This document shows positions 22,801 to 55,109 of a DNA stretch of 64,000 nucleotides, in pieces. The DNA is from Guillardia theta CCMP2712 (Eukaryota; Protista; Cryptophyta). The notes beneath the pieces were generated by a model. It saw only the letters and a program-made list of their open reading frames with translations. It was not told the DNA's origin and did no database searches. Positions within the stretch are counted from its first letter, which is position 1, and the number at the start of each line of letters is the position of its first letter. The translations under genes and the position numbers were made by a program. The stretch spans positions 124,001-188,000 of the forward strand of contig NW_005434664.1 of NCBI RefSeq assembly GCF_000315625.1, in the 5' to 3' direction.

Positions 22801-24134
22801 GGTTCGAGCATCGCGCTCATGTCTTGGTTCTTCCTGTTGGCAGGAGCAGGAGCAGGCACAGCACTGATCCCGGGAGGAGCAGGAGGAGGAGCAGGAGGAG
22901 GAGCAGGAGGAGGAGCAGTGAGAGGAAGAAAGGTCGCCTCTAAGAGGATCAGTGGAGCAACAGCAAACGGAGGGGTCCACTTCAACTCCAACTACCCCCC
23001 CTCCTCCTGGTGGGCAACACATGAAGAGGTTAGGAGGATGGTGCTGGAGCTGAAGAACAGGCGGCCGTTCCCTCCCGGGTCATACGTCTACTCCTCTGCT
23101 CTTGGAGTCAAGAAAATCCTCGTCTACCCTCCTCCCTGTGTCCCGGTCAGCTTTCTCCCTTCTCGTCTCGTCTCGTCTCGTCTCGTCTCGTCTCCTTCTC
23201 TCCTCTCTCCTCTCCTCCTTGTCCTTCCCTTCGCCAGCTTCCCAGCATGCTGACGCCTCCGCTCTCTTCACAAAGTAGCTCTGCACCACATCCTCCTCTT
23301 GTCTCTCTCTTCTCCCTCGCTCTCTCCTCACCCTTTGAGCAGGTGGCTCGAGCAGGCTTTGCCCGCCTGGACCTCACCGAGTATCTTCTCATCCAGGGAC
23401 CGAAACGCTCGACGGCCCTCCAGCTCGCCTGCTCTCACATCCTCGACCACATCCTGGAGCTTCACGATCGTTCTGAGCATGTTCCCTTCGGCCTCTTCTA
23501 CGCTGATCAGGAGCAGAGGTCAGCTCACCGAGGATGCGACCTTGCGCGTGCGGGGCATCGAGGGTTCTCTCCTGCGCAGATCAAGCAGAAGGATCGGCAG
23601 GCGATGACGGAGGAGCTTGCTGCTGCTCTCCTCCGCAAGCAGCCGGTCTACACGTGCGGGCTGTTCTGCCTGAAGGAGGGGAGGAAAGAGTCAGAGAACG
23701 AGAGGGAGAGGAAGGAGGACAAGGACAAGGATGGAGAGTACGTCTACTTCACCATAACCCACAACGTCGTCTTTGCTCCCAGCTCAGTCCCAGAGAGAGG
23801 ACGAGGCTACTTGCTCGACGAGGTGGAGTACCTATGGGAGCCGGACCTTACCTCCCCCTTCGTCAACGTCTTCTTCACCATGAACAGCTCCAAGATAGCG
23901 CAGAGCCTGTACAGAGTTGACAACAAGTTCGAGGACCCGGTGGGTGAGGAGAACAGCCGAACGTTCCTTGCGATCATCGACGCCAGACTGCAGCAGGAGA
24001 TTGACGAGGGGAGGTACATGGACGCTGCCTACTCCATCCTTTATAAGTCGGTACGTCTCCTTCCACCACCTCTTTGTGCTCGCCCCAAACCCCCTGCCCT
24101 TTTCTGCTTCCTCCCATATCACCTGCTCTTTCAC

Positions 24135-24206
<72 letters not shown>

Positions 24207-24510
24207 TGTCCTTGTCCTTGTCCCCGTCCTCGTCCTCGTCCTCGTCCTCGTCTTCGTCCTCGTCTTCCTCTGCCTCCTCGTCCTCTCTGTCCCCAACCCC
24301 TTCTTTCTGCACCTGACTTGAAAGAAGATGCTGCACAGTCGGCTGCTGGGGATAGGTGCCCTGCTTGAGAAGAGGCGGACGGCGAGAGATTACGAGGAGA
24401 CGATCCAGACGTCTGGGAGGAAGCATCTGGACCACAAGTTCGAGAGAGAGTGAGACTCCTACTCCTCCTCCTCCTCCTCCTCCTCCTCCTCCTCCTCCTC
24501 CTCCTCCTCC

Positions 24511-24541
<31 letters not shown>

Positions 24542-25467
24542 GCTGACATCCTCCTTCTCCTCTCCTTCTCCTTCCTTCCTCCATATCCCTCCCTTTTTCT
24601 GTCCTGCTGCTCCTCCCGGTCATTCTGCTCTCCCAACCGTCATTCTGTTCCCCATCTCCCTCCTCCTGTCCCCACATGTCCCCCCCTCACTCCCTTGGCT
24701 CCCCATCTTAGATTCTACCCCAGGTACCCGGAGCTCGCAGCTCTAGCGGATGCCTTCCGAGTGATTCACTCCCTTCCACAGCAGTTGCTCTGCATCCAGC
24801 AGCAGCTGCTCACCATCGCTTCCGCCCTCTCCTCCTCCTCCTCTGAGATCCGTCTCAAGCTCAACATGAAGCGCATCGTCGTACGTCCTTCCTCCCCTCC
24901 CTCATCCTGATCGTCATGCGCAGCCTCTTCCTGCCTCCCTCCTCCGCTTCCCCGTCCCTCCCGCCTCCTTCCCTCCCCCTTTTTGCTTGCCTCCTTCTCC
25001 TCTCACACTTGCCCAGCATCAGCTGGAAGGATGTCGTACCGGTCTGCTGGGCATCGCGCGGGAGGACGGGTCCAACGTCCTCCTCTACGGCTGCTTCCGC
25101 GCAATGAGGATGCGCCTCAACGCCATCGCCGAGCAGGTCGACTCGATCGCCAAGGACCCCGCAAACTTCGCGGACGCTGCCAACTCTCAGCTGGGTACCT
25201 CCTCGGTGCGGTACCCCAGCTTCAGGGAGGTGACGGGGAGCAGCGCAGAGAGGAAGCTTATGGAGAATTTCTCAGCTCTTAACGACCTCCTCTCAGCTGC
25301 CGTCCAGTTGTCTTCCTGTGTCGCCTGGCAGCAATTCTCGTCCTTCCAGCTCCTGCAGGACAAGCTGACGGTCCAGAGAGGAGGAGGAGGAGTAGGAGGA
25401 GGAGGAGGAGGAGGAGGAGTGCTGGGCAATGGATGACAAGGTACAAGGCAGAGGTCAAGGTCGGTGA
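19892..25467 (+). CDS. Large uncharacterised multi-exon protein with an IQ-like motif, a docking (RIIa/Dpy-30)-like segment and an apparent internal duplication
   Basis: 931-aa ORF plus downstream exons (23247-24050, ~24720-24880, ~25017-25370); AAKTLQTFYRKR; YIKGSGIQSQFESIL...PANPYP. True start and end uncertain. Confidence 0.6.
22470..22646. repeat. (CTCCTG/CTCCTT)n intronic microsatellite
   Basis: Directly visible. Confidence 0.9.
24135..24541. repeat. (CGTCCT)n and (CCT)n(CAT)n intronic microsatellites
   Basis: Directly visible in two consecutive introns. Confidence 0.9.
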
Positions 25468-25648
25468 GGTGGGAAGACAGCTGTTTGATGATAGTGACGG
25501 AGGCGATGGCGTGAGATGGAGAAGGGAGAGGCAAGGGGAGGAGGAGGAAGGGGAGGGGAGAGGTGGAGCGGGGAGCAAAGGAGAAAGCGTTGAGGGGGGA
25601 GGAGATAGGGTAGCTGAGAGCAGTTTATATAGAGAGAGGGAGATCTTT

Positions 25649-28600
25649 TTAAGTGTTGTACAAGTCCTGCCATATCTCGATCAAGCTGTCGAGCCCGTAC
25701 AAGTAACCTATCAAAACTGTTAAAGTCTCCCCCTCCTCTCCCTCTCCCTCCCTTACCGTCTTCGTAGTTCCCTTCCTCCCACTCTTTCCTGCACGGAGGA
25801 GGAGGAGGAGTATGAGTAGGAAGGAGGAGGAAGGGGAGAGGGGGAGGAGGAGGAGGAGGAGGAGATCATGTAGATGGGTGAAGAACAGGACGAAGAAGGA
25901 GACAGGGAGAGGGCAGGACAAGGGCAAGAAGCAAAGGTCAGCTAACACTCTCAACGCGCAAACTCTCCTCCCCACCTGTGGTCGAGCGTCACCGGCACCT
26001 TGTTCGCATGCGCGAAGTCGATCATCCAGATTCCCAGCTTGCTCTCCTCCTCAGCGTCGTACACGAAGAGCAGGGAGCTGCCCACCAGCTCATGCAGGCG
26101 GAACCACTCCGAGGCCTCCAGCGCTGTGCGGAGATGCTTGAGACGTTCGAGGCAGGCAGCCCAGACCTCCGTCCTGCCGTTGAGGAACTTGTGGAAGGAA
26201 AGCTGGATATCTGCCTTGGAGCTGATCGTCTTCGTCTCGTCCTTGCTGATCGAGTTCTTACCCGCCTTCACCATCTCCAGGCGGAACCCGAAGTGACCCG
26301 AGGAGGACAGGCGCTCCCTGAACTGCATGTACCGCAGCTTCGTGATGCCCTCCTGGATCTCAGCTGGGGTCGGCTCTTCGGGAGCTGCTTTGATCATCTT
26401 CTCGAGCAGGTCCATCCTCTTCTTCTTGTTGCTCACCTCGCTCTCCTGGAACGTTCGCTTCCCCATCTTGATGTCCATCAGGCACGGCGACTTCAGCCCA
26501 GCTGTCAAGTCTTGGAGGATGGCCAGCTCATGCCCGCCCTCCTCCGCCTTCCCCCGGTACTCAGGGCAAAAAGAGCGCATCTCGTTGCCCATGAGCTCCT
26601 GCAGAGCCTCGTGCTCCACGTGGTTCGTCTTCTTCAGCACGCAGCCAGGCCAGTGGTCGGCCGTCACGAAACCATCTTCATGCCCAGCACCTTCGTGCTT
26701 CTTGGCGGCTGCCTTGTCCTCCTTTTCTGTAGAGGACGAAGATTCCTTCTTCTGCTTCTTGCCTGCAGTTGCCCCAGCATCTTCTCCCCCAGACTTGAGT
26801 CCGACTTCGTCGTGCTGAGTCTCCTTTGCATCTTTTACAGTGTTCTCCTCTTTGATACCATTTGTTTCTTTCACTTCCTTCTTTTCTCCTTTCTTCTCCA
26901 CGTGGTTGCTCGTCATCACTATCTTCTTGGCTGTATCCGCGTCTCCATTCCTCTCCCTCACTTCGATCGCCTCGTTCAGCAACGGCTCATCCCAGCTCTG
27001 GTTCAGGCTTAGAGCCTTTTCCACATGCATCTTGAGGCCGAACAGGAGGCTTTCAAGACCCGCGCAGGCCTCGTCTATTACAGGGAACGATCTGTTGGAC
27101 GACTGCGATGTTAATGAGAATGATTTTGCGCTCAAAATGACGTCAAGGAAGGTCAACCAGGTCTCCAGCACGCTCGCCTTCAAGCTCTTCGTCCTCCTCT
27201 CCTCGACTAGCCGACCGGCATGAAGCCTCACCCGCTTCCAATAGCTACGCGACGTCCAGTGCCAGAACAAATTCAGGATCTGCTTCCTTCTTCTGCGTGT
27301 GAGCGCCTTCGCCGCCGCTGCTCGTGCATGCTCCATGTATTTGCTGCACAGGAAGAACTCCTTCCACTCCTTGCTGTACCTCGACTGCATGCTGAGAGCT
27401 GTATGAGAAGCTATCACGCTCTCCCTCAACTTCCTCATCCTCTCTCGTCGGAAGTAATTCTGCCACATTCGAAGAGCGTTCGTCGCCTGGCAAGCTAGTC
27501 AATCAACGAGTATTGTACAACTTCACAGGCAGCAACAGGTCTGAGGTTACCTCAAATATTTTCCACCTCAAGCTGATTCGCATTTGAATCCGTCGCAATT
27601 CAATCTCGCGAATGCAGAATTGCCTCCAGTCGCGCAGGAAGCAGCTCACTGCGCCATGCAGCCAGAACTTGAGGACAGACTTGAGAGAATGCTTTGCTGC
27701 TCTGATCCTCTCGCTCACGATCTGGATCAACGAGACTCAGTCCAGACTCTCACAATCAAACAAGCAAAACAAGGCTCAAACAGCAGCACTCACCCTCCAG
27801 GAAGCAAACGCATGTCGCAGAGGAATAGATTCCATGCCCCAGTACGACGCAGCGACTGTGAGCTTGTTGAGAGCGAAAGGAGAGCATACTTTCTCCGAGA
27901 GGATGTCGAAGAACAACACGCTCCTCTGGGTTTTATCATGATTCCTCGAGACCTGGTCATTCGCGACAATCCCCTTCATGTTTGTGCTTGAAATCCTTCA
28001 CAAACTCAACGTCCACCTCTGTCAAATCGAACGCAGCCTCTTTTTACAGGCTCTATAATCTCATCGTTGAGGAACAGCAAATGTTAAAGCACATGAAATT
28101 AACGGCTGACGCATAGACCCTGAGTAGGGACACCTGACGTTATTCTCGTGCACCTCGCACCATCCAGGTGACCACAGTATCCAAACCCCTTGCAAGGGAG
28201 CTGAAACCTGAACCAAACCTATCAGTGAAACACCGGAGAAAGTTTCAAAATCTTTCAATGCTTCGACCAAAGCCAACCATACTCGTTTTCTTTTCCTTCA
28301 CAACTACTTGGGAGCTTAACGTTGAGACAAACGTTTGAAGATCATCAGTCATTTGTTCCTTACAACAAGCTGAACGCAAGTGGAAACATGCCGCCTGCCT
28401 GTCAAAGATATTGACACAGTTTCGTTGCGTTTCTTGCGATCTGTCTCTTCCTGCCATGGTTCTGCTTATCTACATGTTCAACTTGCGAAGAACACACGAC
28501 TTAGCTCTTGGTCCGGAGCGAACTCTGCTGCCTGCTAGGAAGCCACACATTTGGCAATGGCAAACCTACTCGTTCTCGCAACATCATCCTCTTGGTTTCA

Positions 28601-28779: not shown

Positions 28780-29480
28780 ATCTTTTTTCGAAATCTCTTT
28801 AGTCATGAAAATTGTTTCCATTCATTCAAAAGTTTAGATACTAATTTTAGTCATATTAAACTTTTTACCACCCACCCCACAATTTTCGCTCTCCTCCAAG
28901 CGCCTAGACCGGCAAAAACTTCCTTGGCTCGCGCCGGTCCGTTACTGCGCAACGATCGGTCAACTTAAAATTGATCTAGAGCTATAAAACACTTTTTCGC
29001 ATCGGAGTTTCCTGGGGTACCCCGGACCCCTCTGTTGACCATAAAAATGGGGGTACTACTACTGATACTGGTTCTGTCAATGCGGGTGGGTACCCGGAAA
29101 ATGTTCATTTGAGGAGAAGACGGGGGGGTGACCCTACCCCACCCCTCCAGGGGTCCAGAAATCTCCGTCCTACAACTTCTTCACTACCCCCATTTACCTA
29201 TCATAGTACCCCCATTATAGCACCCTACCTGGTTCCCCTACCCCTCAGGGCCTCGTATCTGTTTTGGCCCACCCTTGCCAAGTAAAGACTCGCCCACCTT
29301 TGGAACCGTTGATGACTTTTTTTATCGATTTAATCGACTTTGGCGATCGATTTAATCGACTTTGGCGATCGATTTAATCGCCGGGGCCACGTCGGCGCCC
29401 GGCGGCCCGGCGGCTCGATCGTCACAAAATTCCCGGTGAAACTAATTTATATTGTTTTTCACGAATACGAGCTCTCGGGG
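28780..29480. other. Intergenic island C with TACCCC tract, 22-bp tandem repeat and CCCGGTGAAACTAATTTAT motif
   Basis: (ATCGATTTAATCGACTTTGGCG) x2.6 at 29324-29380; 19-bp motif at 29432-29450 is identical to 43918-43936. Confidence 0.6.
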
Positions 29481-29524
29481 GATCGCAATGCATCGATGCG
29501 GGAAATAGGAAGAATGAGTTGGGA

Positions 29525-29614
29525 AGGAGGAGGAGGAGGAGGAGGAGGAGGAGGAGGAGGAGGAGGAGGAGGAGGAGGAGGAGGAGGAGGAGGAGGAGGA
29601 GGAGGAGGAGGAGG
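29525..29614. repeat. (GGA)n about 30 copies just upstream of the beta-helix gene start
   Basis: Directly visible. Confidence 0.95.
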
Positions 29615-29648
29615 AAAAACAAGGCGAGTAATTTCATTTGGCTTCAGC

Positions 29649-32489
29649 ATGAAGCTTTCCCTCTTCTTTCTCCTCCTCCTGAATTTTTTCGCTTACTGCT
29701 CCTCGTCATGTCGGAGATCGTTTGTCAAGCCGCTTCTCACGTTGCGTGGAGGCATGGGCAGAGCAGACGAGCATCTGCCGCGATCGGGTGACGCTGTGGT
29801 GATGCACAGCTCGTCGAAGGCACATGCTGTTCCTGGAGGCTGCGAAGTGTACGATTTCCTTCCATTGGCGGTGGAAAGCGCGCTAGAGGGGATGAGCAAA
29901 CGAGTCTTGGTGAGAGCAGGAAAGCACAGCTGGGACAGCGCGAAGCTGATCGTAGGAGGATGGAGGGCTGATCCAGCCAACCCCTACGAGTCCCTCCAAG
30001 AGCGAGAGGCCTCGGAGGTGACCAAGGAAATCACACGAGATGGCAAGTCGCCCACGGAGCAGACAGTCAGTCTGGTAGTGCAGGGGGAGGAAGGAGCAAG
30101 GATGTGGGGCATGTGGTTCCTTGAGCCTGAGAGCACAGGAAACTTCACCAACGTGACCTGTGCTGTGAACGCGTCGCACGACACGTCGCAATGTACCATA
30201 GAGGTCTGGGGGAGGGGATGGAAGTTCACGAGCTGTGGGATAAGGTGAGTAGGCTAACTTGGACCAGACTGCTGCTGCTGCCTTTGATGCTGCTCTTGTT
30301 CCCGCTCGTGTCCTCACTGTCGCTTCTTCCTCTACTCTTCATCCTCGCTTCAATCGGCTCATCACATTCTTCTCATTTTCTTCGCAGGAGTTTGCAAGGC
30401 ACAGCATTGAAATGCTCTAGGTGGGCCAGCATAAACTGCTCCTCATGTGGTGGGATATCTTTTCTGTTCTGTTTCTTCTTTCCTAGCTCGGCCTTCCCTG
30501 ATACTCCTGGCCCACTCCCAGCTCCATTTCCTCTTCACCTTCTTCTCGCCCCTTCTCTTCCTCCTTCCCTTCTTTGCCTCTTTCCCTCCTTGCCTCTCCC
30601 TGTCCTCGCTCCTCGCTCCTCGCTCCTCGCTCCCTCTCCCCTGCTCCTTGCTTGCTCCGCTCCTTCATCCACCTTTCTCTTCAAGTATCTTTTTTTCCTC
30701 ATGCCAAAGTCGATCAGGTATCGGTGGCCTTGGAGCCGGAGAGAAAGATGAGTACGGAGAATGGGTTAGTTTCCTCCTTTTGATCACTCCCTGACCTCTC
30801 TGTCCCGTCCTCGTAATACTTCCTTACCCCCAGCGTTCCTCTCACTTCCTCTCGTGTTCATCATTTTGCTTTCCCCTCCTTGAGTTCTAAGGAGTCGACC
30901 AGGTCATGGACAAACGCTTTCGGACCGGGGGAGAGCAACGAGCAGAGAATGGCGTCGAGATGCGGGACGTTAGCAGGTGGCTCGGCGTTGCGGGTCAGCT
31001 GTCGCCCTACTGACGGAATGCATGAAAGAGCTGCTCTTAGTGACTGCGTCTTGGAGTACACTGGCCTTGGGTCCTACGCTGTGCAGGTGAACCAGTCAGC
31101 TCTCCCCTTCCCCGTCCCCGTAGTCGTCCCCATCCCCGTCCCCGTCCCCGTCCTCGTCCTCGTCCCCGTCCCCGTCCCCGTCCCCGTCCCCGTCCCCGTC
31201 CCCGTAGTCGTCCTTGATTGGCTGAGCAGCAACACGAAGACACTCGACTGCGAGCCGAGCATTGGTGGGCGCTCGCAGACGTCCCCCCTGGTCCTTGACT
31301 TGAACTGCAGCATGATCCAGGGGAACAGCGTCGGCCTCTTTGTAGATAGGAACAGCCTGTGCGAGGTCTACAGGTGGTCAGCCGAGGAGGAGGCTGCTGC
31401 TGTGACTGGAGTGCAGGTGTGTCTTCAAGGACAACGACATGGGGGCTTTCTATGCTGGCCCGGTGGCCTACAACGCGAGCATGAGGCTGTGAGGCTTTTG
31501 ACACTCTTGCCCTTGGACTGAGCGCTCGCAGTGTAGGCAATAGGATCTACGGGAAGTTGTGGTTCAGCAGGAGGCGTCCAGGAGGGATCCTTGTACCGAC
31601 TCCAGCAGGAGCTCAGCTTGATCTGACGACGTTGTCAGGTGGAGGAACATCACATCGACCGCAACGGGCCAACGTTCAGCAATGAGACTGAGAAGGAGAG
31701 GAGCGAGAGACTTCTCAAGGTGACGAGCCTCCACATGCTCGCGCTCGAGCTCTGACCTCCTGCCTCCTGCCTCCCCCTCCTCCCTCTACCGTCCCTCTCC
31801 CTCTCCTCTCCTCCCCTTCCCCTCTCCTCATTTTCCGAGCAGGAGGAGCACCACGGGCTGGACATCTCCGATGGCTCCTTCAAGGGTCACTTTGACAACC
31901 TTCTCGAGCTGGACGCCTTCAATCCTCTCTGTCTCTCTGCTACCGGCGAGTCATGGAAGAGCCTCGAGGACAAGCTGAAGGAGACGACGCTCGGAGGATA
32001 CAACCAAGTCTATGCTGCTGCCCGGTGCGCTCTCCCTCCTCCTGCTCCGCTGAACATTGCATCAGCAACATCCAGAAGGTGGTGGAGGACGAGGAGACGT
32101 GGAAGGTGAGTCTGATGTGATCACTCGCAGCTTCTGACTTGAATGGCGGGGTTTAGCGAGGAGAAATCCCCCCGATGACCGAGGAAGTGAGTTCTGCCCT
32201 TGACCTTGACTCTCTCCCTGACTGCCGTCCAAGGATGCTGTCAACCTCCTGGAGGCGAACTGGCAGGACAACAAGGTGACGAGACTTGCAGACGACGAGC
32301 TTTCACGAAGCATGCACGCATGCCCACCAGCACTCCTCACCCTGTTATCTCCTCCTCTGAGTCTGCCATCAGGCGATAGAAGCATGGATCTACTCTCAGT
32401 TCCGAGAAGAAGGCACCAGGCTCCCTCAGCAGCAGCAGATGGATGGTAGCAGCGAGACTATAGAGGATGACGATCAAGATATCCTCTGA
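29649..32489 (+). CDS. Signal peptide + LRGG protein with right-handed beta-helix (pectin-lyase-like) region
   Basis: MKLSLFFLLLLNFFAYCSS, LTLRGG, GKHSW, MWGMWFL, Cys/Asn-ladder segments (LSDCVLEYTG, LNCSMIQGNSVGL); many exons; ends TGA 32487-32489. Confidence 0.55.
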
Positions 32490-45679: not shown

Positions 45680-46340
45680 GGCTCATCTCATCTGAGAATT
45701 ATAAGTTTCAAGTTTGGACTTGTCGATGATTCAGTCACGCGGCCGTTCTCCGAGTTTGCCGCTCTGGCACTCACGCGAGTCCTCCCGGTAGGACTTGAAC
45801 GGTTAAGTTCTCCGTACTGTCGGGATCTGGCCGGGCCCGGCCGTGACGCCGCCCGGCCGCCGGGCACTGTGACTCCTGCTGCCTGCTGCAAAACTCGAGT
45901 CCCCGGGCAGCCATTGCTGCACTCCGAGTCGGCCGGGCCGGTCCTAGTATGGATAACTTTTAGTTACTGGGCTGAGTAGGTCCCGATTTCATCAAACTCC
46001 GAATGGATTGAAAGAATACAGGCACCCCCACCCCCACCAAATTAGGCAACCACCCTATCAAAGCCTGGGGTAGTATCCCTTTGAGCTGACTTCCGGGGTT
46101 TCGATGATGAGCGCCAGGGGTAGGGTCATCCTACCCAGTCCAGTCATGTGACTGGTGGGGTTGTGGAGCTATAAGAGGTTGTGCCGAGATAACGTGGGGT
46201 GATACTGGTAAAAGCTGGGGGTACTGGTTTTTGATGGGTAGTGTGCAAGGTACATCATCACCACAGGGTAGGGTCTGATTTCAAACGGGGTAGGTCCATG
46301 TGTGAGGATGAGATGGGGGTGGGGGTAGAGTGGCCCTTGA
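45680..46340. other. Intergenic island F (AAACTTGAAAC on minus strand, GGCCGGGCCGG core, GGGTA tract)
   Basis: 16/17 match to the island A motif in opposite orientation; GGCCGGGCCGG at 45931 as at 10681. Confidence 0.55.
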
Positions 46341-46919
46341 GGGGACGAGGCGAAGAGGCGCGAGGCGAAAGATGCTGGAGATGCTGAACGAGATCCCCGT
46401 CGCATGCACAACGGTGGAAGAGGTGAGGACACGGAGATGAATGGAACACATGGAGATTGAGAAGTGAAGATGTTTAGCTCTTGTTTTACGACATGTACTC
46501 GTTCAAGCTGTTGAGGGAGACGAGGGAAGGGGGGTAATGTCGGAAGCTTCTGCATATACACATATGCTGTCCCTTCGCTTTCCTTGCTAGTCTGTCTTGT
46601 TTCTTCGCCATCACCAATGCTGAGATTACCTTTGTCAAATCCTGTCCAAGACAGAGGATTGACTGAGAGGTTTCGGAACTGTGAATTTGACTTGGCAAAA
46701 TATGTCCCTTGGTTTGGTTGCAATCTTGATGATTGTCATGACTATACGAAAGTTGTATGGAGTTGTAACCTTCTGATTGCCATGATGTTCTTTGTCATAT
46801 TCTATAACCATGTTGTCCCTGATAGATTGTATCCGAACTCTGATTGCCTGTCAAATGACACTTGATCTGTCTATTGAAGCTGTCTTGAATCCCTGCTTGT
46901 CTTCGTATCCTTTCTGTGT

Positions 46920-47792
46920 ATGGTTGTTCACAACATCCAAACGAGGAACACACTCGCAAATCTGGCAAGGTCAGAACTGAACATCGTCTTGCTTATCAGG
47001 TTGGATCCACTGGAGTCGGTGCGCTCACTATCTCTTTCTTGATCTTCATCGTTTCGTGCATTGTCTTCCTTTCGAAGGCCAACACGTCAGGAGAGCAGCG
47101 AAAGTAAGCCCCGCCTCCTCATGTGGGCTGTTGCTGATCTCGCCCCACAGATATTATTACTTGAGCTCGTATGCATGCGGGTTCGCTGCCATGGCCTACT
47201 TTGCTATGCTTTCCGGACAGGGTTGGACGGTCATTGCTGGATGCAGGCAGTTCTTCTACTCGCACTTTGCGGAGAGGCTCATCACTAGCACTCTGATTCT
47301 CATCCTCATGGGAAACCTTGCTGGTGCTGGACCGGACCTCATGTTCGGGGCCTGCGGATCGAATGGTAAGCTGATGCTGAAACTGTACACATGTCCTGAC
47401 TGTGTGTCTCAGCCATCTACATGATTGCTACCTACATGGGATCGGTGTCGGTCGTCACTACGGTGAAGTGGTTCTGGTTTTTCATTGGTCTTGTCGGGCT
47501 TTTTGCTACGTTGGTGCACCTGGCATTGAGTTTCAAGAATGCAGTGGATGTGAAGGGAGGCGAGCGAGCTCAGCTGTACTCCAAGGGCGCTTGGCTTCTT
47601 ATCCTTGCCTGGATGTGTTACCCCATCGTGTGGCTCTTCTCCGAGGGATTCGCATCGTTCTCGGTCTCGTTCGAGGTCTGTGCCTATGCTGTGTTGGACA
47701 TCATCTCAACAGTCGTGCTCGGCTTCATGATCATGTCTGGCCATGACTATCTTGGAGGAAGCGCTCCATCGCAGTCTCGCGAATATGTCTAA
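46920..47792 (+). CDS. Microbial (type-1) rhodopsin homolog lacking the retinal-binding lysine
   Basis: Seven hydrophobic helices; AAMAYFAM (helix B), WMCYPIVW (helix F), LDIISTVVLG (helix G, DxxxT instead of DxxxK); introns ~47104-47150 and ~47366-47412; N-terminal exon uncertain. Confidence 0.9.
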
Positions 47793-48035
47793 ATAGAAAA
47801 CATCCCAGGCTAGTTGAGCTGATTGACGAACCATCTGGATCTGATGAGGTTGGGAGGGCGCATACGAGCTCATTTCATCTCGTTTGTGTGTTGCTCTCAT
47901 GAAATATAGACTTGTGATCCTTGATGAGAGTTGGTGGCTTTTTAAACCATAAAATTCATTCGCAACCAACTGAATGAAAACGCAGCTATTGGCAATATGC
48001 TATCTCACATTAGATTCCATTGTACAAGTTAAGAG

Positions 48036-51000
48036 TCATGACAACTCGATGGCTTCTTCAGCCTCCTCCTTCACGTGAGCCGGGTACGCTGTTGCTTGAT
48101 CCCCGTTCGACATGCCCTGCTGCAAGTGAGTTGCGTTGTCATCGTGAGAGAAGGATGCGGGCCGAGGGGGTTGAGCTTTGGTCTCGTAAGGAGGAAGAAG
48201 AGGGCTCGAGTGGAGGGCGAACTTCTCTCCTGCCGCTGAGTACCATCTCAGCTGAGCGTGTTGGACTTTCTCCCAGAACCTCCTGGTCACTTCCTCCTCG
48301 ACATGCAGCAGCCCTTGCCTTCCAACGATGGAGTCGTAGGTCAATGCTATGTCCCCCTCATAGCTTGTTTGCATGCCCGCCTGAGCATCTACCTCACTCC
48401 TCCCATTTCTGTTCGCCTCTGCCAGCATGTCCACGAGCTTTTCAGCCACGAATCTCCCAGCTATCTTGGCCAGGAAGCTCTCTAGCTTCCCGGTGTATTC
48501 CGCGTGCAGCTCACGCCAGTAGCCGACACAGACGTTGACGTTCCTGACGAGGATGCCACAGAGGGAGGAATGAGAGGAGGATGGAGAGCTGAGAAGAGTC
48601 TCCAGCAGGGCCGCTTCCTTGCTGCCTCTGACGACAGCCTTGAGGTGTACCATCTTCCATGGGGACACGAATGAAGCAGGACAAGTGCCGGTAGGACATG
48701 GCAGCGAGCCCTGGATCGAGGGGTTGCCCAAGGTGATGGGAGGAAGCGTGCCGGAGTCAGGCCGCATGTTGAATGACAGGGGAGGAGGAGCCCCATGCGC
48801 CGTGATCGCTGTGGCAGGTTGCGGCAGGTGGTACCTCAGGAGGGATACATCCTTGGCGATCGGGGAGAGCAACCTCTTCAGCTGCAGCATCAGCTTGTCG
48901 TCTGACTGGTACAAGCCCTCGAGACATAGAGGGCTGTACGCTATGACCTGCCGGAAACTTTCAGAACCTTCCTACACCTCCCTCCCTTCACCGTCAGGTT
49001 CACAGGATGGTAGCGCCAGACGCGAGGAGGCGGTTGGAAGGCCCCGGGGACGCTCTTGACAAGGTCGTGGATCTCGTTCTTGAACGAGTCCTGAAACGCC
49101 ATCTCGGGGTAGGAGCTGTGCACGAAGTCGGTGAACTCCTCGGAGAAGCGCGCCTCCTCTGCTCGCAAGGCTTCCTGCTCAGCCACATCACAAGGGAAGG
49201 GGAGGAAGGGGGCAGTGATCGAGGCACCTGTTTCCTCTTCCTGCGCTCTTGGTCCTTCACTTTCCGCTCATTCTCTTTCACCGCCTCTAGATCAACCGCC
49301 AGCATCCACAGCTTCTGCGCGACTGCGGCAGCGGAGTCGACGGCTGGCTTACGGACAAGCAGCCCTCCTTCCCTCTTGGCGCTCCGCTCGCTCTGCCAAC
49401 GAGCATGGATACGATTCCAGCGAGACTGCCACTCAGACTTGACGCGCTCCAACAGCTTCTCCAGCTTCGCCTTGTCCTCGCCGCACTCGTTGATGGAGCT
49501 CTCCGATATGCTGTATGCCGACAGCTCCTCCTTGAGGAACCTGACCTGAAACTTGTCCTCGTCCTCCTTGGACCACTCACTTTGCCTGGTCCCCTTGGAG
49601 CCGATGTCTAGGAGCTGCCAGCCGCTGCCTCCCTCGGCTTCCGTCCACTCCTCCTCGGGCAAATCGCAGGTCATACCCTGGAGCACCTGGCAGACAAAGA
49701 CAGCTTCCGCATCGATCATGATGCCATCAGGGATCTTCCTCCACTTGCTGCAGTTCTCGCACATGACCCACTCTTCCTTGTCTGGATCCAGTCCGATCTG
49801 CATCTTCCCGTCCACCTCCCAACCTCCATCCTCCTTGTTCTTCTGCTCCTTGGTCGAGCACGAGATGCCCTCGATCAGGCTGCACTCGAACGCGTCGTCG
49901 TCGCACAGCAGGTGCATCATGTAGGGGGGGAGCAGCCGCCACTTGCAGCACTTATCGCACTGCACCCACTGCACTCCTTTGATCTTAACGTCCTTCACCT
50001 TCCTCAGCATCGCGTCCACGTCTATCCTCACCGAGTCCTTCCCTCCTGCGCACGAGCAAGGCTTCGCCTGGCACCCGAACGGCACCCAGTACTCCGTTGC
50101 AAAGTTGCAAGACTCGGCGCAGTTGTATCCGTTGTTGAACCCGCTATGGTACGCGCCCGGAAAGTTGATCACAAACTCCCCGGCGTACTGCACAGTCCTG
50201 GTCAAGGGTATCCCGGCCTTGAGGAGGATGGAAGGCTCGATCATGTTGCTCTTGTGCCGCAGAAACTCCTTGCACTGATCCGCCTGCGTGGGGAAGTGCT
50301 TTCGGGCAAGAGCCTCCAGTTTATGCCCGTGGGTCGCTGGCACGCTATACCAGGTCTTGGGGGCTCCCCAGTGGAGGTAGTTGATAGAGTGCAGGTCCAT
50401 GTCCTCGCAGTGCCAGGCAAAGGCCGCCCGGTACATCCCCACGTAGATGAAGGGAGTGTTCACACCGGGCACGCGCTTCTTGAGCCCGAAGGTCAGCAAG
50501 CTCGGGAGCATGCTGACGTCCCAGTCGCCGCAGTGCGAGGGGTCAAAGAGCCCTTCTCTGCCGTCTGACCGCATCCCCTTGGGAGCAGGACAGTCAGCCC
50601 CGTACATGGGAGGGTTGAAGAGTACGTTCTTCCAGAACTGACGCTCGAGGAGGTCGATGTCATCCTGGTCAAGCACCTTCTTCTGCCCATCGACAGGAGG
50701 AGCGAACGCCTTGCTCTGAGCGATCCTCTTGAACTCTGCGAGCTTCATGCTCCGCTTCTCCTCGTGCATGTTCATGTACAGCCCCTTCCCCCCGATAGCG
50801 TTCTGCTTGATGGGTCGCTTCACTGTGACCGCCTCCTCCAGCTCTGGGCTGGAGTCTTGCAACGTGTAGACATCGTGTGCTCGGGGCTGCCAACCAGCCG
50901 GAGGAACCACCTTACACACTCCGATGTGTCCTACTAACCTGTCGAGTTTCTGAACATACGCGTAGAAATCTGCGAACTCTTCCTCGGTGGGGTAGAAGAC

Positions 51001-51114
51001 AGGAGTCTCCATCATGGACCCGATGTCGATGGGCCACTTGCTGTCTCTGCCTCCGTAGAGCATGGCATTCCTGCGCTCTTTGATGGGGTCGACCTTCTTG
51101 TTCCTCTTGGTCAT
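48036..51114 (-). CDS. KDM4-like JmjN/JmjC histone demethylase with two zf-CW domains
   Basis: TPVFYPTEEEF (JmjN); GVNTPFIYVGM..FAWHCEDMDLHSINYLH, YHSGFN (HxE...H triad); WVQCDKCCKWR and WVMCENCSKWR. Extra 5' exons to about 51800 possible. Confidence 0.9.
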
Positions 51115-51941
51115 CTCCACCTCCGCTCTGCTCTGCTCACACGGACCTGACAACACAGACAAACGTCAAAGGCATCGCATGGCCATGGCATGCAGTCTCG
51201 TCTCTTGTTGTCTCTGTTGTCTCTTGTGTTCTCTTCAGCAAACCTCCTTCTCTCCTGCACAATGATCTGCTCTTGGCCAGTTCGACAGCCGGTGAATCAT
51301 TGCTTCACGCGATCAGCCCTTCTTTCGCCTTCCTAGTTTGCATCTTCATCAGCCACCTTCGTCCTTTTCCTGTGGTGGTCCTAACGAAGTTCTTATCCCC
51401 TCTTCCTGTCTCGTCCTCCTTTGCAGCCGCCTGTACCTTGTCCTTCACTCCTTCAGCGCCTAGAAGCTCTCCTTTCTCTTCTCTCAATCTAGGTGCTCTT
51501 GCATGCTCTTTCAACCTAAACCTTTCAACTTCATCCTTCCTCATCATCTCCCCTCTGCTCTCTTTCCCCTCCTCCTCCTCCTCCCCTCTCCTCTCGGTCT
51601 TCATGGCTTGTTGCAAAAATAAATCCTCCGCGCATCTTCAAACGTATCACTGAGATGGGACTGAGCGGGGATGAGGGACCACGAACCCTCCTGAAGGGCA
51701 ATGGCGCGGGCTGGAACCGAGGAGCTGGTAGCGGTGGGGGAGACGACGAGGACGCTTCCTTGACATGTGAGGACAGATCATGGTAGACGAGACAAGAGAG
51801 AAAGAGTGCGCGCATGTACTTGAGATGAGCACCCGGGTTGGGGCATACGGAAGAGTTGTATAGATAAACTTCTGAAGTGCGATCAAGTTTGGAAGCTCTG
51901 ACTTGTCCTGCTAGCTTGAAGCCTCTGAAGCCTCTGGAGCT

Positions 51942-54900
51942 ATGAAGATCTCCGAGCTGTTTGCAGAGCAGAACGAAGAGATGCAGCTGAGCCACCAGGA
52001 GGCAAGTGAGCAGGAGGCGTCCAAGTCCAAGGCTCGGGTTGGTGGAGCCTTCGACGACGTGAGGAAGGCCATGAGCGAGAAGAAGAAGAGAAAGGCGAAT
52101 GTGAGCCAGGAGACCCCAGCCAAGGGGCAGAAGAGGATAGACACTTTCTTCTTCTCCAAGAGTGACGAGCTGCATAGCTCATCCGCCCCCCCTCCTCCCA
52201 ACAGGGAGGCAGGAGAGCCTGGGGATTTGCTTCCACGAACTTGCGAGGAGTGGGACGAGAAGTGGAATGGAGTGATCGAGAACTTCAAGGTCGGTCGAGA
52301 GAAAGTCTCGCGCAGCTGTCATGAGCAGAACATGGAGGAGTGCGAGCAGCAGGAGCCTGTCATGGACTTGAAGGCTTCGATGGAGAACCCGAAACTCGAG
52401 CAATCGGAGGAAAGTGCGTTTGAGGCCAGGGAGGATCCTACTACCAGCATGAAGGAGGAGCCGATGAATGTGAGACCATGGTGTGAAAGTCTCGGCAAGT
52501 CCTCACGCTGTTTGCTGTGCAGTACCTTCCCTCTTCCTGTGTTGACCTCTGGGACAAGGATCATGTCAGGATGCCTTTTTCTACTCACAACGTCTCAGTC
52601 AGGGATGGGAGGCCGAGGTGGATTCGTCTTAAGGAGCTCTTGACGCCTCCGGACAAGTTCTCCCTAGGAGATCCTTTGCAGAACTATCGCGCGTTTGAGA
52701 AAGCTCTGTTCGGTGATGCAACTTTGTCTTCTGTTGTGATATTCCTCTTTTCATGTGATAGTTTTGAAAACAGGGTACATGAGCAAAGCTGGACAGACAC
52801 AGCTGTCAGGGAAGTTTGTTGCGTTGCAATCTGTCATCCTGGAAGACATGTCGGAGGAGGAACAAGATGTTTTCTTCAAGCAGCTGCTTCCTTTCATCAT
52901 TAACACGGCACTGCGGTTGCCAGAGTTCTGTTGTGATCCAGTTGAGCTGTTGAAATCGGGACGGGAAGGGAGTGTGAAGCTGAACTCGTAAGTTGTGTGA
53001 TGATGATCACTGTTGTCTCGTTGAACCATCTCTGCCTGCCTTTGCACCTGATTCTCAATCCCAGATTACAAATCCTTTCGTTGATCTCCAATGCGTTTCT
53101 TTGCACTTTCCCAGAACGAAAAGAAGTTGGTAAGCCCAACAGATTTCAGCGATTCAACTTCACAAGCCTCTTTGGGCAGCAATGGTAATGACGCCTTGTA
53201 CATGGCTGGATGTGCTTGTCTGTTTGTCATCGTCGATGGATGGTGATGTGAGTGAAGCTGATGGTGATGCTGCAGGAGAGATGAAAGAAGATTGAATCAA
53301 CAGAAGGAGAAGATAAAATGTATCCTCCATTACATCAGGAAGCAATCTCTCAGAGCCTTCACCACCCTGGCTGGCCGCCATGTTGTCTTTGCTCGCCGTA
53401 TGATCGACGATGAAAGTTTCCTACCTTGTCCTCCCTCCCCTTCATTGGACATCAACGTGACCATCCTTAACGACGGAAAGATCGAAGATCACGACCCCGA
53501 TGGCCTAACCTGGCAGGCAGATTTCGCAAACGAGATGGTTGGACTCCTTCTCTTCTTCCGCGCACAACCTCCTCCTCTTGGCGCTTCCCTACCCTGTCAT
53601 TCCGTCCTCCTCCACCTTTCCTCCTTTCCTCCTCCTCCTCCTCCTCCTCCTCCTCCTCCTCCTGCGATTCTTATCCAACCGCCTCTATGCTGGACTGACT
53701 TTCTCTGCAGATAGGAGGAGGAGTTCTTAGCTCGGGCTGCCTGCAGGAAGAAATTCGTTTCTCCATCTCCCCCGAGCTTCTTGTCTCGCTCCTCCTCGCC
53801 GAGAAGCTGGAAGACGGCGAGACGCTGCTGATGGAAGGGAGCGAACGGTTCTCAGCGTACGAGGGCTATGCTTCCTCTTTCCGGTTCTGTGGAGACTGGG
53901 AGGAAGAGAGGAGGAAGAGAAATAGGCGTGACGAGAACAAGAAGGAGAGGGAGGAAAGGGACGAGGAAGAGACAAGAAAGGAGGGAGGGAGGAGCAATGA
54001 ACAGGGAAAGGCGACAGTAACTGCGATGGATGCAACTTTCTTCGGAAGAAGAGAATTTGCGCGGCAGTTTTCGTATCTTCGACATTTTCTTCTTCCTCCT
54101 CATGACCTCCCGCGCAGGTGGGCGAGCATCGAGAGAGAGCTGATCAAGTGCTGGTGCGCTTTCCGACCACGCGAGGAGGAGAAAGTAACTCGGAAGGAGG
54201 AGGAAGGGAAAAAGGAGGAGGAGAAAGGAGAGGAAGGAACGGTAAATGAAGAGGAGGGGAGGAAGAAGGCAGGGGACCAGGGGAGCGGAGCGCCTGCGAT
54301 AGCTACGGGGAAATGGGGATGTGGAGCGTTCGGCGGGGACCCACTCCTTAAGTTTCTAATCCAAGTGTTGGCTGCTTGGCGAGCAGGTCGGGAAGAACAA
54401 GGGGAAGGGAGGAAGGCAGGGGATGGTGGGCAGGCAGGCAGGCAGGCAGGCAGGGGTGGGGGGTGGGGAGGAGGGAGGGGAGGGGAGGGGAGGGGAGGGA
54501 GGGAGGGAGGAGGTAATAGCTCGTGCAGGCCGTGATCTTGTATTCTTTACATTTGGGGATGTGCACTTTTCATCGTCAGCAGAGAAAGTCATGAGGTGAG
54601 GGAGGAGCGAAGGGGGAGGAGGGGATGGTAGAAGGAGGGAGAGGAGGGGGAGGAGAGGAGGAATAAAGAAGGGGGGGGGGAGGAGGAGGGGTAAAGACTG
54701 AAGACACGCTGCCAGTCTAATCAAGAGATCCAACTGCTCCATGACGTCGCTGGTTGCGATCTTGAAAGACTTCGAGGTATATCACTTTAAACATTTACAG
54801 TTCCCACAGCCCTTTTCCCTGTACTCCCCTTCCTCTCAGTCGTTCTCTTCCTCTTCCTCTTCCTCTTCCCCCTTCCTCTCAGTCGTTCTCCTCGTCTTCC

Positions 54901-55109
54901 TCTCTGCAGCCCCTCCCTCCTCGTCTCCTTCCGCTCCCTCCCTCCTCTCCTCTCTTCCCCTCCCTGTCATCATCCTTACTTCATCGCAGCATCATCGTGA
55001 CACCCTTCAAGTGTCGCACGCGGCGGCACCCGAGGTTCATGCGCGTCTCTTCCGGGCGTACATCGAGCAGCAGCTCTCAGCGTTGTGCAATGCAACTCAG
55101 GAGATATGA
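51942..55109 (+). CDS. PARG: Poly(ADP-ribose) glycohydrolase
   Basis: HVRMPFS, QADFAN, GGGVLSSGCLQEEIRF (GGG-X-QEE), ERFSAYEGYASSF, IATGKWGCGAFGGD across many exons. Confidence 0.93.

What the first reader, a model, noticed from the sequence alone, without database searches (positions are those of the whole stretch)
25649..27980. Inositol-polyphosphate kinase fused to Sfi1-like centrin-binding repeats
Seen: upstream of an intact IPK domain (PxxxDxKxG, SSLL, IDF, EDGYL) are helical repeats with Trp spaced 33, 33, 33, 36 and 33 residues (HAFASWR, CFLRDWR, ALRMWQ, YSKEWK, LFWHWT, VLETWL), kept across introns. Four of them lie in the same ORF as the kinase. Known: Sfi1 repeats are about 33 aa with F/LxxW and bind centrin; animal IP3 3-kinases are calmodulin-regulated. 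Inference: an IP3-consuming kinase tethered to centrin fibres or the basal body, linking local Ca2+/IP3 signalling to the flagellar root system.
Basis: partly seen in the sequence, partly recalled or inferred. Interest (0 to 1): 0.75.

Follow-up and report, generated by a model that had tools for sequence, protein, structure and literature searches.

The report
IP3 kinase with Sfi1-type repeats
One real gene of the alga Guillardia theta joins an animal-type inositol-trisphosphate 3-kinase to a rod of six 33-residue tryptophan repeats of the kind that bind the calcium sensor centrin; no database entry or paper I found shows this combination, and its binding partner is still untested.

Summary
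On the minus strand, 25649-27979, lies a five-exon, 652-codon gene of Guillardia theta, with GT..AG at every intron. Its C-terminal half is an intact IP3 3-kinase-type catalytic domain (ITPKA E 1.9e-55; IPMK only 1.5e-7).

A Hanusia phi transcript (626 aa) is collinear over all five exons, so the fusion is real. The public G. theta model is truncated by a spurious 25-nt intron that removes the catalytic motif.

Pfam's Sfi1 model does not hit the repeats. They are nevertheless significantly similar, in register, to a large family of 33-residue Trp repeats in the same genome, and some members of that family do hit Pfam Sfi1. Five of the six repeats keep Sfi1's hydrophobic signature.

Centrin binding and a basal-body location remain inference; the one complex prediction gave no verdict. 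The fused form is seen only in the Guillardia/Hanusia lineage.

Other first-stage notes of this scan flag Sfi1-like repeats fused to other domains elsewhere in this genome; I did not verify them.

Verdict: a new variant of a known kind, of moderate interest.

The parts
27794..27979 (-). Exon 1 (codons 1-62): start codon and first repeat, ending in AFASWR (Trp61)
   Evidence: Reading. GT donor at 27793-27792. Identical to residues 1-62 of P0002 and collinear with P0001.
27722..27793 (-). Intron 1 (72 nt, phase 0, GT..AG)
   Evidence: It is absent from the Hanusia transcript protein P0001.
27551..27721 (-). Exon 2 (codons 63-119): second repeat (Trp82 and Trp94, FLRDWR) and the start of the third (Trp115)
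27487..27550 (-). Intron 2 (64 nt, phase 0, GT..AG)
   Evidence: The acceptor ..ccag|GCG gives KIFE|ATNALRMWQ, as in P0002 and P0001.
25976..27486 (-). Exon 3 (codons 120 to 623, first two bases): repeats 3-6 (Trp127, 160, 196, 229), a conserved helical segment, a Lys/Glu-rich linker and most of the kinase domain
   Evidence: ORF. Pfam IPK 3.1e-31. Boundaries.
27109..27859 (-). Sfi1-type repeat region, about residues 41-245: six 33-residue repeats spanning exons 1-3, inside a 200-residue stretch without proline (residues 54-253)
26692..27108 (-). Residues 246-384: a conserved helical segment (about 254-300) followed by a Lys/Glu/Ser-rich low-complexity linker
   Evidence: dN/dS is 0.29 against a close relative.
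26461..26487 (-). PxxxDxKxG catalytic motif (PCLMDIKMG, residues 453-461)
   Evidence: alignment to ITPKA.
26467..26491 (-). Spurious 25-nt GT..AG 'intron' of the public gene model GUITHDRAFT_134097. It shifts the frame and ends that model at 461 aa, without the kinase.
   Evidence: P0002 ends ..LTAGLK then WGSERSRRAR. The window ORF and the Hanusia protein read straight through.
25789..25975 (-). Intron 3 (187 nt, phase 2, GT..AG)
   Evidence: The joined reading DHR|KEWEEGN matches Hanusia P0001.
25757..25788 (-). Exon 4 (32 nt; KEWEEGNYED)
25708..25756 (-). Intron 4 (49 nt, GT..AG)
25649..25707 (-). Exon 5: the end of the kinase domain (G)YLYGLDSLIEIWQDLYNT and the stop codon at 25649-25651
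25500..25648 (-). 3' untranslated region, covered by RNA-seq reads
   Evidence: Run X9 has depth up to about 10 at 25591-25681. All first mates lie on the + strand, as expected for a minus-strand RNA in a stranded library.

Best explanation
This is a single Guillardia theta gene of 5 exons and 652 codons. It encodes an inositol 1,4,5-trisphosphate 3-kinase-type enzyme with its own N-terminal rod of six 33-residue Sfi1-type repeats.

Shown:
- The gene structure and the fusion.
- That the catalytic domain is of the IP3K type.
- The non-random, conserved Trp periodicity.
- The kinship of the repeats with the genome's Sfi1-like repeat family.

Inferred:
- Each repeat presents the Sfi1 hydrophobic signature (Trp, a hydrophobic residue 3 before it, another 7-8 before it) on a long helix and binds one centrin or centrin-like EF-hand protein.
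- The kinase is thereby stationed on a centrin-containing structure and/or placed under Ca2+ control.
- There it converts IP3 to IP4 and ends the IP3 signal locally.
- In this reading the repeat rod does the two jobs that animal IP3 3-kinases give to their variable N-terminal cytoskeleton-targeting segment and their calmodulin-binding helix. No counterpart of that calmodulin-binding helix is detectable here.
For: One gene:
- The ORF is continuous, with four repeats and the kinase in a single exon.
- All splice sites are canonical.
- The Hanusia phi transcript protein P0001 (626 aa, 70% identity) is collinear from the same start Met to the same C-terminus.
- A Guillardia-like metagenome contig carries the repeats and the start of the kinase in one ORF.
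- Stranded RNA reads cover the 3' end.

IP3K type:
- Pfam IPK E 1e-31 to 1e-38.
- ITPKA, ITPKB and ITPKC match at E 1.9e-55 to 4.8e-49, against 1.5e-7 for IPMK and 7e-6 for IP6K. The IP3-lobe motif TKxRYMQxRE..GFR is conserved.

Repeats are real and constrained:
- Trp chain seen in at most 3 of 20,000 shuffles; 200 residues without proline.
- The same spacing occurs in a homologue of 26% identity.
- dN/dS is 0.26.

Sfi1 kind:
- The period and the occasional 35-37-mer match human Sfi1, and the consensus is AX7LLX3F/LX2WK/R (PMC2173958).
- Sfi1's reversed triad is L8xxxL4xxW1 (PMC3871271). Five of the six repeats have a hydrophobic residue at -3, and four of them also at -7 or -8 (Ala in the third) (my reading of the 33-mers printed).
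- The repeat profile scores 19.8 against the genome's 33-residue Trp-repeat family. Column-permuted controls with the Trp columns held fixed give 3.9 +/- 2.4 (0 of 300 reach it). With Trp masked the score is 10.9 against 2.3 +/- 1.0.
- Against only the loci that Pfam Sfi1 touches, the score is 16.4 against 3.5 +/- 1.8.
- hhalign against the C202 repeat ORF gives E 0.001 over 114 columns with six Trp in register.
- That ORF matches the C113 ORF at 2e-10, and the C113 ORF hits Pfam Sfi1 at 37.8 bits.
- UniRef's name for the truncated G. theta model begins 'Sfi1 spindle body dom'.

Context: the genome encodes a canonical centrin and at least 12 loci with IP3-receptor ligand-binding domains.
Against: - The current Pfam Sfi1 model does not hit the protein, even at E 10.
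- Only 2 of the 6 repeats fit Kilmartin's strict pattern [FWL]xxW[KRH].
- A simple HMM of the genome's repeats scored G. theta's N-terminus at only 5 bits (12 of 1000 shuffles did as well) and did not report Hanusia's.
- An exhaustive HMMER search found no Sfi1 protein, only two close relatives of the region itself.
- The AlphaFold model is helical but of low confidence (pLDDT 41), so a single continuous helix is not established.
- No experiment or prediction here shows binding to centrin. Basic Trp-containing helices also bind calmodulin.
- No RNA read from G. theta itself spans the repeat-kinase junction.
Confidence: 0.55

Rival explanations
1. The repeats are docking sites for calmodulin or another non-centrin EF-hand protein. 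They would serve mainly as a Ca2+ switch for the kinase, a multi-site version of Ca2+/calmodulin activation of animal IP3 3-kinases, and not as a tether to centrin fibres.
For: - Animal IP3 3-kinases are calmodulin-regulated (established knowledge).
- No counterpart of their calmodulin-binding helix was found next to the catalytic domain: one search gave no PDB hit, although a full-length ITPKA chain is in the library.
- The repeats are basic amphipathic helices with Trp, a common calmodulin target type.
- G. theta has at least 86 EF-hand loci, including a calmodulin-like gene.
- The language-model look-alikes include, at noise level, both an IQ cluster and an Sfi1 cluster.
Against: - The 33-residue period and the reversed Trp/-3/-7 signature are those of centrin-binding Sfi1 repeats, not of IQ or 1-8-14 calmodulin motifs. 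No IQ consensus is present (my reading).
- The nearest relatives in the genome are Sfi1-type repeat proteins.
Confidence: 0.2
2. The repeat region is a structural or targeting helix that binds no EF-hand protein. It might drive self-association or bind another cytoskeletal element, as the N-terminus of animal ITPKA binds F-actin. In this reading it only shares ancestry or composition with Sfi1-like repeats.
For: - There is no Pfam Sfi1 hit.
- The match to the strict motif is degenerate.
- Constraint is relaxed compared with the kinase (dN/dS 0.26 against 0.03).
- A distant homologue of the repeat module has no kinase within about 1.6 kb downstream, so the module has a life of its own.
Against: All six Trp and their spacing are conserved down to 26% identity. 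This is what is expected if each Trp is a binding anchor, as in Sfi1 (PMC2173958). The profile similarity to Sfi1-type paralogues goes beyond the Trp.
Confidence: 0.2
3. The fusion is an artefact: two neighbouring genes, a repeat protein and a kinase, that are transcribed separately, as the public gene model would suggest.
For: - The public G. theta model ends at 461 aa, before the catalytic motif.
- The one RNA run that could be laid covered only the 3' end.
Against: - Four repeats and the kinase share one uninterrupted 505-codon ORF.
- The public model's end depends on a 25-nt 'intron' that shifts the frame.
- A Hanusia phi transcript encodes the whole fusion, and a second Guillardia-like contig keeps the same ORF.
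Confidence: 0.03

Closest known systems
Animal inositol-trisphosphate 3-kinases (ITPKA, ITPKB, ITPKC)
   Same: - The catalytic domain is collinear and about 40-45% identical (E 1.9e-55 to 4.8e-49).
- It has PxxxDxKxG, SSLL and IDF, the IP3-binding helical lobe and the C-terminal EDGYLxGL.
- The general layout is the same: a variable N-terminal targeting or regulatory region followed by the catalytic domain.
   Different: - The N-terminus is unrelated. There is no F-actin-binding segment and no recognisable calmodulin-binding helix.
- Instead there are six Sfi1-type repeats and a Lys/Glu-rich linker.
- The host is a cryptophyte alga, not an animal.
Sfi1 and Sfi1-repeat (SFR) centrin-binding proteins (yeast and human Sfi1, Tetrahymena Sfr1-13)
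   Same: - Tandem repeats of about 33 residues, each marked by a conserved Trp, with an occasional 35-37-mer.
- A hydrophobic residue 3 and 7-8 positions before the Trp, and often Lys/Arg after it.
- Almost no proline.
- Large repeat families in protists (PMC2173958, PMC5112337, PMC3871271).
   Different: - Only six repeats, and a degenerate motif.
- No hit to Pfam PF08457.
- Attached to an enzyme, whereas the Sfi1 and SFR proteins in the papers I read are described by their centrin-binding repeats alone. I found no paper describing an Sfi1-repeat protein that carries an inositol phosphate kinase.
- Centrin binding is untested.
The 33-residue Trp-repeat ORFs of Guillardia theta itself (contigs C113, C202, C50, C60, C72, C85)
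   Same: - The same 33-residue period and the same 12/21 spacing of two Trp.
- Shared features such as V/I-x-x-x-W .. L-x-x-W-R .. ELRR.
- The C113 and C72 ORFs pass Pfam Sfi1's cut-off.
   Different: - Those ORFs are long (about 470 to over 1,570 codons of open frame held in the loci), Arg/Ala/Gly-rich and made of near-identical super-repeats.
- The kinase's six repeats are diverged from one another and of different composition.

Membership tests
Inositol polyphosphate kinase family (Pfam PF03770), IP3 3-kinase subfamily | PF03770 domain above the curated cut-off | tested here: met
   109 bits for the window ORF and 133 bits for the Hanusia orthologue; the cut-off is 22.2.
Inositol polyphosphate kinase family (Pfam PF03770), IP3 3-kinase subfamily | Catalytic motifs PxxxDxKxG, SSLL and IDF intact | tested here: met
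   PCLMDIKMG, SSLLFVYD and MIDFAHA are present in the ORF and align to ITPKA.
Inositol polyphosphate kinase family (Pfam PF03770), IP3 3-kinase subfamily | Closer to IP3 3-kinases than to IPMK or IP6K, including the IP3-binding helical lobe | tested here: met
   ITPKA 1.9e-55, ITPKB 5.6e-55 and ITPKC 4.8e-49, against IPMK 1.5e-7 and IP6K 7e-6. The alignment is full length, through TKxRYMQxRE..GFR.
Inositol polyphosphate kinase family (Pfam PF03770), IP3 3-kinase subfamily | Phosphorylates the 3-hydroxyl of Ins(1,4,5)P3 | not testable with these tools
   Needs an enzyme assay.
Inositol polyphosphate kinase family (Pfam PF03770), IP3 3-kinase subfamily | Calmodulin-binding helix just N-terminal of the catalytic domain (animal members) | tested here: not met
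   The N-terminal region has no similarity to any PDB chain, although a full-length ITPKA chain is in the library. The stretch before the catalytic domain is a Lys/Glu/Ser-rich linker.
Sfi1-repeat (centrin-binding repeat) proteins | Tandem repeats with a period of about 33 residues (23-36), each with a conserved Trp | tested here: met
   Trp at 61, 94, 127, 160, 196 and 229. At most 3 of 20,000 shuffles match. Conserved in Hanusia and in a homologue of 26% identity.
Sfi1-repeat (centrin-binding repeat) proteins | Consensus AX7LLX3F/LX2WK/R, or Kilmartin's search pattern [FWL]x2W[KRH] | tested here: inconclusive
   Two of the six repeats fit the strict pattern (FASWR, LRDWR). Five of six have a hydrophobic residue at -3 and three of six have K/R at +1 (consensus from PMC2173958).
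Sfi1-repeat (centrin-binding repeat) proteins | Hit to Pfam PF08457 (Sfi1) | tested here: not met
   No hit at E up to 10 for the ORF, P0001, P0002 or their N-termini, and none at this locus in the whole-genome scan. UniRef's name for P0002 nevertheless begins 'Sfi1 spindle body dom'; where UniRef takes that name from is not on record here.
Sfi1-repeat (centrin-binding repeat) proteins | Detectable kinship with accepted Sfi1-repeat proteins | tested here: met
   The link is transitive, through paralogues. Repeat-profile scores are 16-20 against permuted controls of 3.5-3.9 (0 of 200-300 reach them). hhalign gives E 0.001 with six Trp in register against the C202 ORF. That ORF matches the C113 ORF at 2e-10, and the C113 ORF hits Pfam Sfi1 at 37.8 bits.
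Sfi1-repeat (centrin-binding repeat) proteins | Repeat region forms a long, nearly proline-free alpha-helix | tested here: inconclusive
   There are 200 residues without proline. AlphaFold predicts helices 75-153, 160-196, 199-219 and 223-245, but with mean pLDDT 41.
Sfi1-repeat (centrin-binding repeat) proteins | Each repeat binds one centrin | not testable with these tools
   Needs binding experiments. The single complex prediction gave no verdict (see Tried and rejected).

The most novel reading that the evidence does not exclude
The kinase is physically mounted, through its own Sfi1-type rod loaded with several centrins, on a Ca2+-responsive centrin structure of the cryptophyte cell, such as basal-body connecting fibres or roots. 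The Ca2+ state of that structure would then set the local rate of IP3 removal. This would be a direct feedback loop between a centrin cytoskeleton and IP3/Ca2+ signalling. G. theta's expanded Sfi1-repeat family may serve generally as a docking rail for signalling enzymes.
Probability: 0.25. Interest if true: 0.7.

Novelty: new variant of a known kind. Interest (0 to 1): 0.5.

Why it matters
IP3 3-kinases end the IP3 signal, and in animals they are steered by calmodulin and by N-terminal cytoskeleton-binding segments. Sfi1 repeats are the standard way cells line up centrin molecules on basal bodies, spindle poles and contractile fibres.

A natural protein that joins the two would give a concrete, testable link between IP3 metabolism and the centrin cytoskeleton. 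It occurs in an alga whose genome also holds many IP3-receptor-like genes.

It also corrects the public record:
- The G. theta gene model is cut short and lacks its kinase.
- The Hanusia entry is labelled only 'Kinase', so neither entry shows the architecture.

The fused form is so far confined to one small algal lineage, which limits its generality.

Tried and rejected
- Complex prediction: residues 63-131 were folded with G. theta centrin (L017:1465-1926). The score was 0.14 against a mark of 0.34, the controls were not run, and there is no verdict either way. It is not used as evidence.
- Pfam, PDB sequence search and Atlas look-alike searches of the N-terminus gave nothing usable. There was no Sfi1 hit. 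The best Atlas clusters are unnamed, and the IQ and Sfi1 clusters appear only at noise level, 0.77.
- Exhaustive HMMER search with the N-terminal profile found only two relatives of the region itself and no Sfi1 proteins.
- A 33-column HMM of the genome's repeats was weak: 5 bits, with 12 of 1000 shuffles doing as well.
- AlphaFold of residues 1-300 came out helical but with pLDDT 41, so no fold search was made.
- RNA evidence: six of the seven runs that hold the stretch are listed without a library type. The three of them that I laid cover the introns, so they are genomic DNA. The one true RNA run gave 31 reads, at the 3' end only. The repeat-kinase junction in G. theta RNA is therefore not shown.
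- Word search with the likely true Sfi1 orthologue (C60 ORF) returned nothing. I therefore had no Sfi1 from another species to compare directly.
- hhalign of the N-terminus against the C60 ORF was not significant (E 0.17).
- I looked for 33-residue Trp periodicity in the six best alpha-kinase loci, to test another scan note, and found none.
- The joined five-exon G. theta protein was not sent to any search tool. Exons were searched by reference, and the database proteins P0001 and P0002 stood in for the spliced product.
Full report
**Origin and gene structure.** The window is contig C10:124001-188000 of Guillardia theta CCMP2712. The 505-codon ORF is 100% identical to GUITHDRAFT_134097 over the part that model covers.

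The gene lies on the minus strand. Reading the sequence and checking the boundaries by script gives five exons:
- exon 1: 27794-27979
- exon 2: 27551-27721
- exon 3: 25976-27486
- exon 4: 25757-25788
- exon 5: 25649-25707

All four introns are GT..AG, and the total is 652 codons.

The protein predicted from a Hanusia phi transcript (P0001, 626 aa, from a 2,191-nt MMETSP contig) is collinear with this model from the same MKGIV start to the same ..LIEIWQDLYN end. This confirms every junction, including EDG|YL across intron 4.

A metagenome contig from a very close relative of Guillardia (L048) carries the repeats, the linker and the start of the kinase in one open frame.

The public G. theta model (P0002, 461 aa) leaves the true frame after ..LTAGLK by removing 25 nt (26467-26491, GT..AG). 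It stops ten codons later, and so loses PCLMDIKMG and the rest of the kinase. I take this for a modelling error.

The joined G. theta protein was not sent to any search tool. Exons were searched by reference, and P0001 and P0002 served for the spliced product.

**RNA.** Three of the six runs listed without a library type that hold the stretch (X1, X2, X4) were laid. They cover the introns, so they are DNA. The one true RNA-seq run gave 31 reads. All lie at 25500-25772 (last exon and 3' UTR), with first mates on the + strand, as expected for a minus-strand transcript in a stranded library. The gene's 3' end is therefore expressed. The repeat-kinase junction in G. theta RNA was not seen, and the evidence that the fusion is transcribed comes from Hanusia.

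**The kinase.** Pfam IPK matches at 109-133 bits.

Against solved structures the C-terminal 250 residues match ITPKA, ITPKB and ITPKC end to end at E 1.9e-55 to 4.8e-49. IPMK reaches only 1.5e-7 and IP6K 7e-6. The IP3-lobe segment (TKxRYMQxRE..SSS..GFR) and the motifs PxxxDxKxG, SSLL, IDF and EDGYLxGL are all conserved. It is an IP3 3-kinase-type enzyme with nothing visibly broken.

G. theta has only two other, weaker IPK loci and at least twelve loci with the IP3-receptor ligand-binding domain. An IP3 signalling system is therefore present.

No counterpart of the animal calmodulin-binding helix was found. The stretch before the catalytic domain is a Lys/Glu/Ser-rich linker.

**The repeats.** A second Trp lies 12 residues before two of them.
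- Shuffling gives such a chain in at most 3 of 20,000 trials, and never gives five pairs at exactly 33.
- Residues 54-253 contain no proline.
- An exhaustive HMMER search of 1.84 billion representatives found only two relatives of this region. One is the Guillardia-like fragment. The other is P0122, from freshwater metagenomes, at 26% identity.
- In P0122 the Trp fall at 146, 179, 212, 245 and 281. This is the same 33, 33, 33, 36 spacing, so the positions are under selection.
- Between G. theta and its close relative, dN/dS is 0.26 in the repeats, 0.29 in the linker and 0.03 in the kinase.

**Are they Sfi1 repeats?**

Against:
- Pfam PF08457 does not hit.
- Only two repeats fit Kilmartin's strict pattern.
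- No Sfi1 protein appears in any sequence search.

For:
- Human Sfi1 is built of 33-mers with an occasional 35- or 37-mer, almost without proline. The consensus is AX7LLX3F/LX2WK/R, and Kilmartin notes that BLAST is unsuitable for finding such repeats (PMC2173958).
- The centrin-binding signature of Sfi1 is the reversed triad L8xxxL4xxW1 (PMC3871271). Here five of the six repeats have a hydrophobic residue at -3, and four of them also at -7 or -8 (Ala in the third) (my reading of the 33-mers).
- G. theta holds a large family of ORFs built of 33-residue repeats with two Trp 12 and 21 apart, on contigs C113, C202, C50, C60, C72 and C85. This is the same arrangement as in repeats 2 and 3 of the kinase. 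Two of these ORFs pass Pfam Sfi1's cut-off; C113 scores 37.8 bits.
- A profile of the 17 kinase-linked repeats (three species) scores 19.8 against a profile of 33 such family repeats. Column-permuted controls with the two Trp columns held fixed give 3.9 +/- 2.4 (maximum 12.3, 0 of 300). With the Trp masked the score is 10.9 against 2.3 +/- 1.0.
- Using only repeats from the loci that Pfam Sfi1 touches gives 16.4 against 3.5 +/- 1.8.
- hhalign of the three-species N-terminal alignment against the C202 ORF gives E 0.001 over 114 columns. Six Trp and an ELRRIxxR segment are in register.
- That ORF matches the Pfam-positive C113 ORF at 2e-10.

I conclude that the repeats belong to the Sfi1-repeat kind as a diverged member. 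The link is transitive, not direct.

**Structure and binding.** AlphaFold on a four-sequence alignment predicts long helices (75-153, 160-196, 199-219, 223-245). Mean pLDDT is 41, so the model is compatible with a partner-dependent rod but proves nothing.

A canonical centrin gene was found on contig C32; it ends ..IMKKTSLY.

**Distribution.** The fused form is seen in G. theta, a Guillardia-like metagenome organism and Hanusia phi.

The distant homologue of the repeat module (P0122; contigs L047, L050, L051) shows no kinase within about 1.6 kb downstream. Other IP3K-type proteins about 50% identical in the kinase have unrelated N-termini (P0003). The module and the kinase therefore probably joined in the Guillardia/Hanusia lineage.

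**Mechanism proposed.**
- Shown: one gene; an intact IP3K-type domain; six conserved 33-residue Trp repeats akin to the genome's Sfi1-type repeats.
- Inferred: each repeat binds a centrin or centrin-like EF-hand protein. The rod stations the kinase on a centrin structure and/or makes it Ca2+-sensitive, where it removes IP3 locally.
- Rivals: the partner is calmodulin or another EF-hand protein; the helix binds no EF-hand protein at all; the fusion is an artefact (nearly excluded).

**Novelty.** No paper in the library links IP3 3-kinase with centrin or Sfi1 repeats. The two database entries each show only half of the architecture.

Other first-stage notes of this scan mention Sfi1-like repeats fused to a PDZ domain and to an alpha-kinase elsewhere in this genome. 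I saw the repeat family independently but did not verify those fusions.

This is a new variant of two known kinds, confined so far to a small lineage and without functional data. I rate it of moderate interest.

Noticed in passing
window 26467-26491 (minus strand): The public gene model GUITHDRAFT_134097 removes a 25-nt GT..AG 'intron' inside the catalytic motif. This shifts the frame and ends the model at 461 aa, so the annotated protein lacks its kinase domain.
   Followed up: yes
G000 contigs C113:36234-37073, C202:about 46000-56000, C50:394843-400378, C60:181641-185285, C72:247821-248174, C85:100435-103680 (loci L009-L016): G. theta carries a large family of long ORFs made of 33-residue repeats with two Trp 12 and 21 residues apart. 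Many form near-identical super-repeats. Only some reach Pfam Sfi1's cut-off. The C60 ORF (966 aa) looks like the canonical Sfi1 orthologue.
   Followed up: partly
G000, 12 loci, e.g. C5:120552-121262, C50:126647-127390, C32:356376-357029: At least twelve loci carry the IP3-receptor ligand-binding domain (PF08709), but there are only three IPK-family loci. This is a strikingly expanded set of IP3-receptor-like genes for an alga.
   Followed up: no
L048:1542-1955 (ENA metagenome contig, protein P0121): In a close relative of Guillardia the first intron is shorter and open in frame, so the gene caller read straight through it. The gene is otherwise about 93% identical to the window's.
   Followed up: partly
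L051:3022-4419 (also L047, L050, L049; JGI freshwater metagenomes): This is a 26-30% identical homologue of the repeat module alone. It has the same Trp spacing, a Gly/Asp-rich tail and no kinase within about 1.6 kb downstream. The organism is unknown.
   Followed up: partly
window 24131-24910, 25279-25578, 29422-29791: Long homopolymeric codon runs (poly-Arg/Gly, poly-Pro, poly-Leu, poly-Glu, depending on the frame) flank the gene on both sides. They are simple-sequence tracts in the intergenic DNA.
   Followed up: no
L017:1420-1929 (G000:C32:606243-606752): The G. theta centrin gene has nearly its whole coding sequence in one exon (169 codons of open frame, ending ..IMKKTSLY). Its first exon, with the start codon, was not located.
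   Followed up: partly
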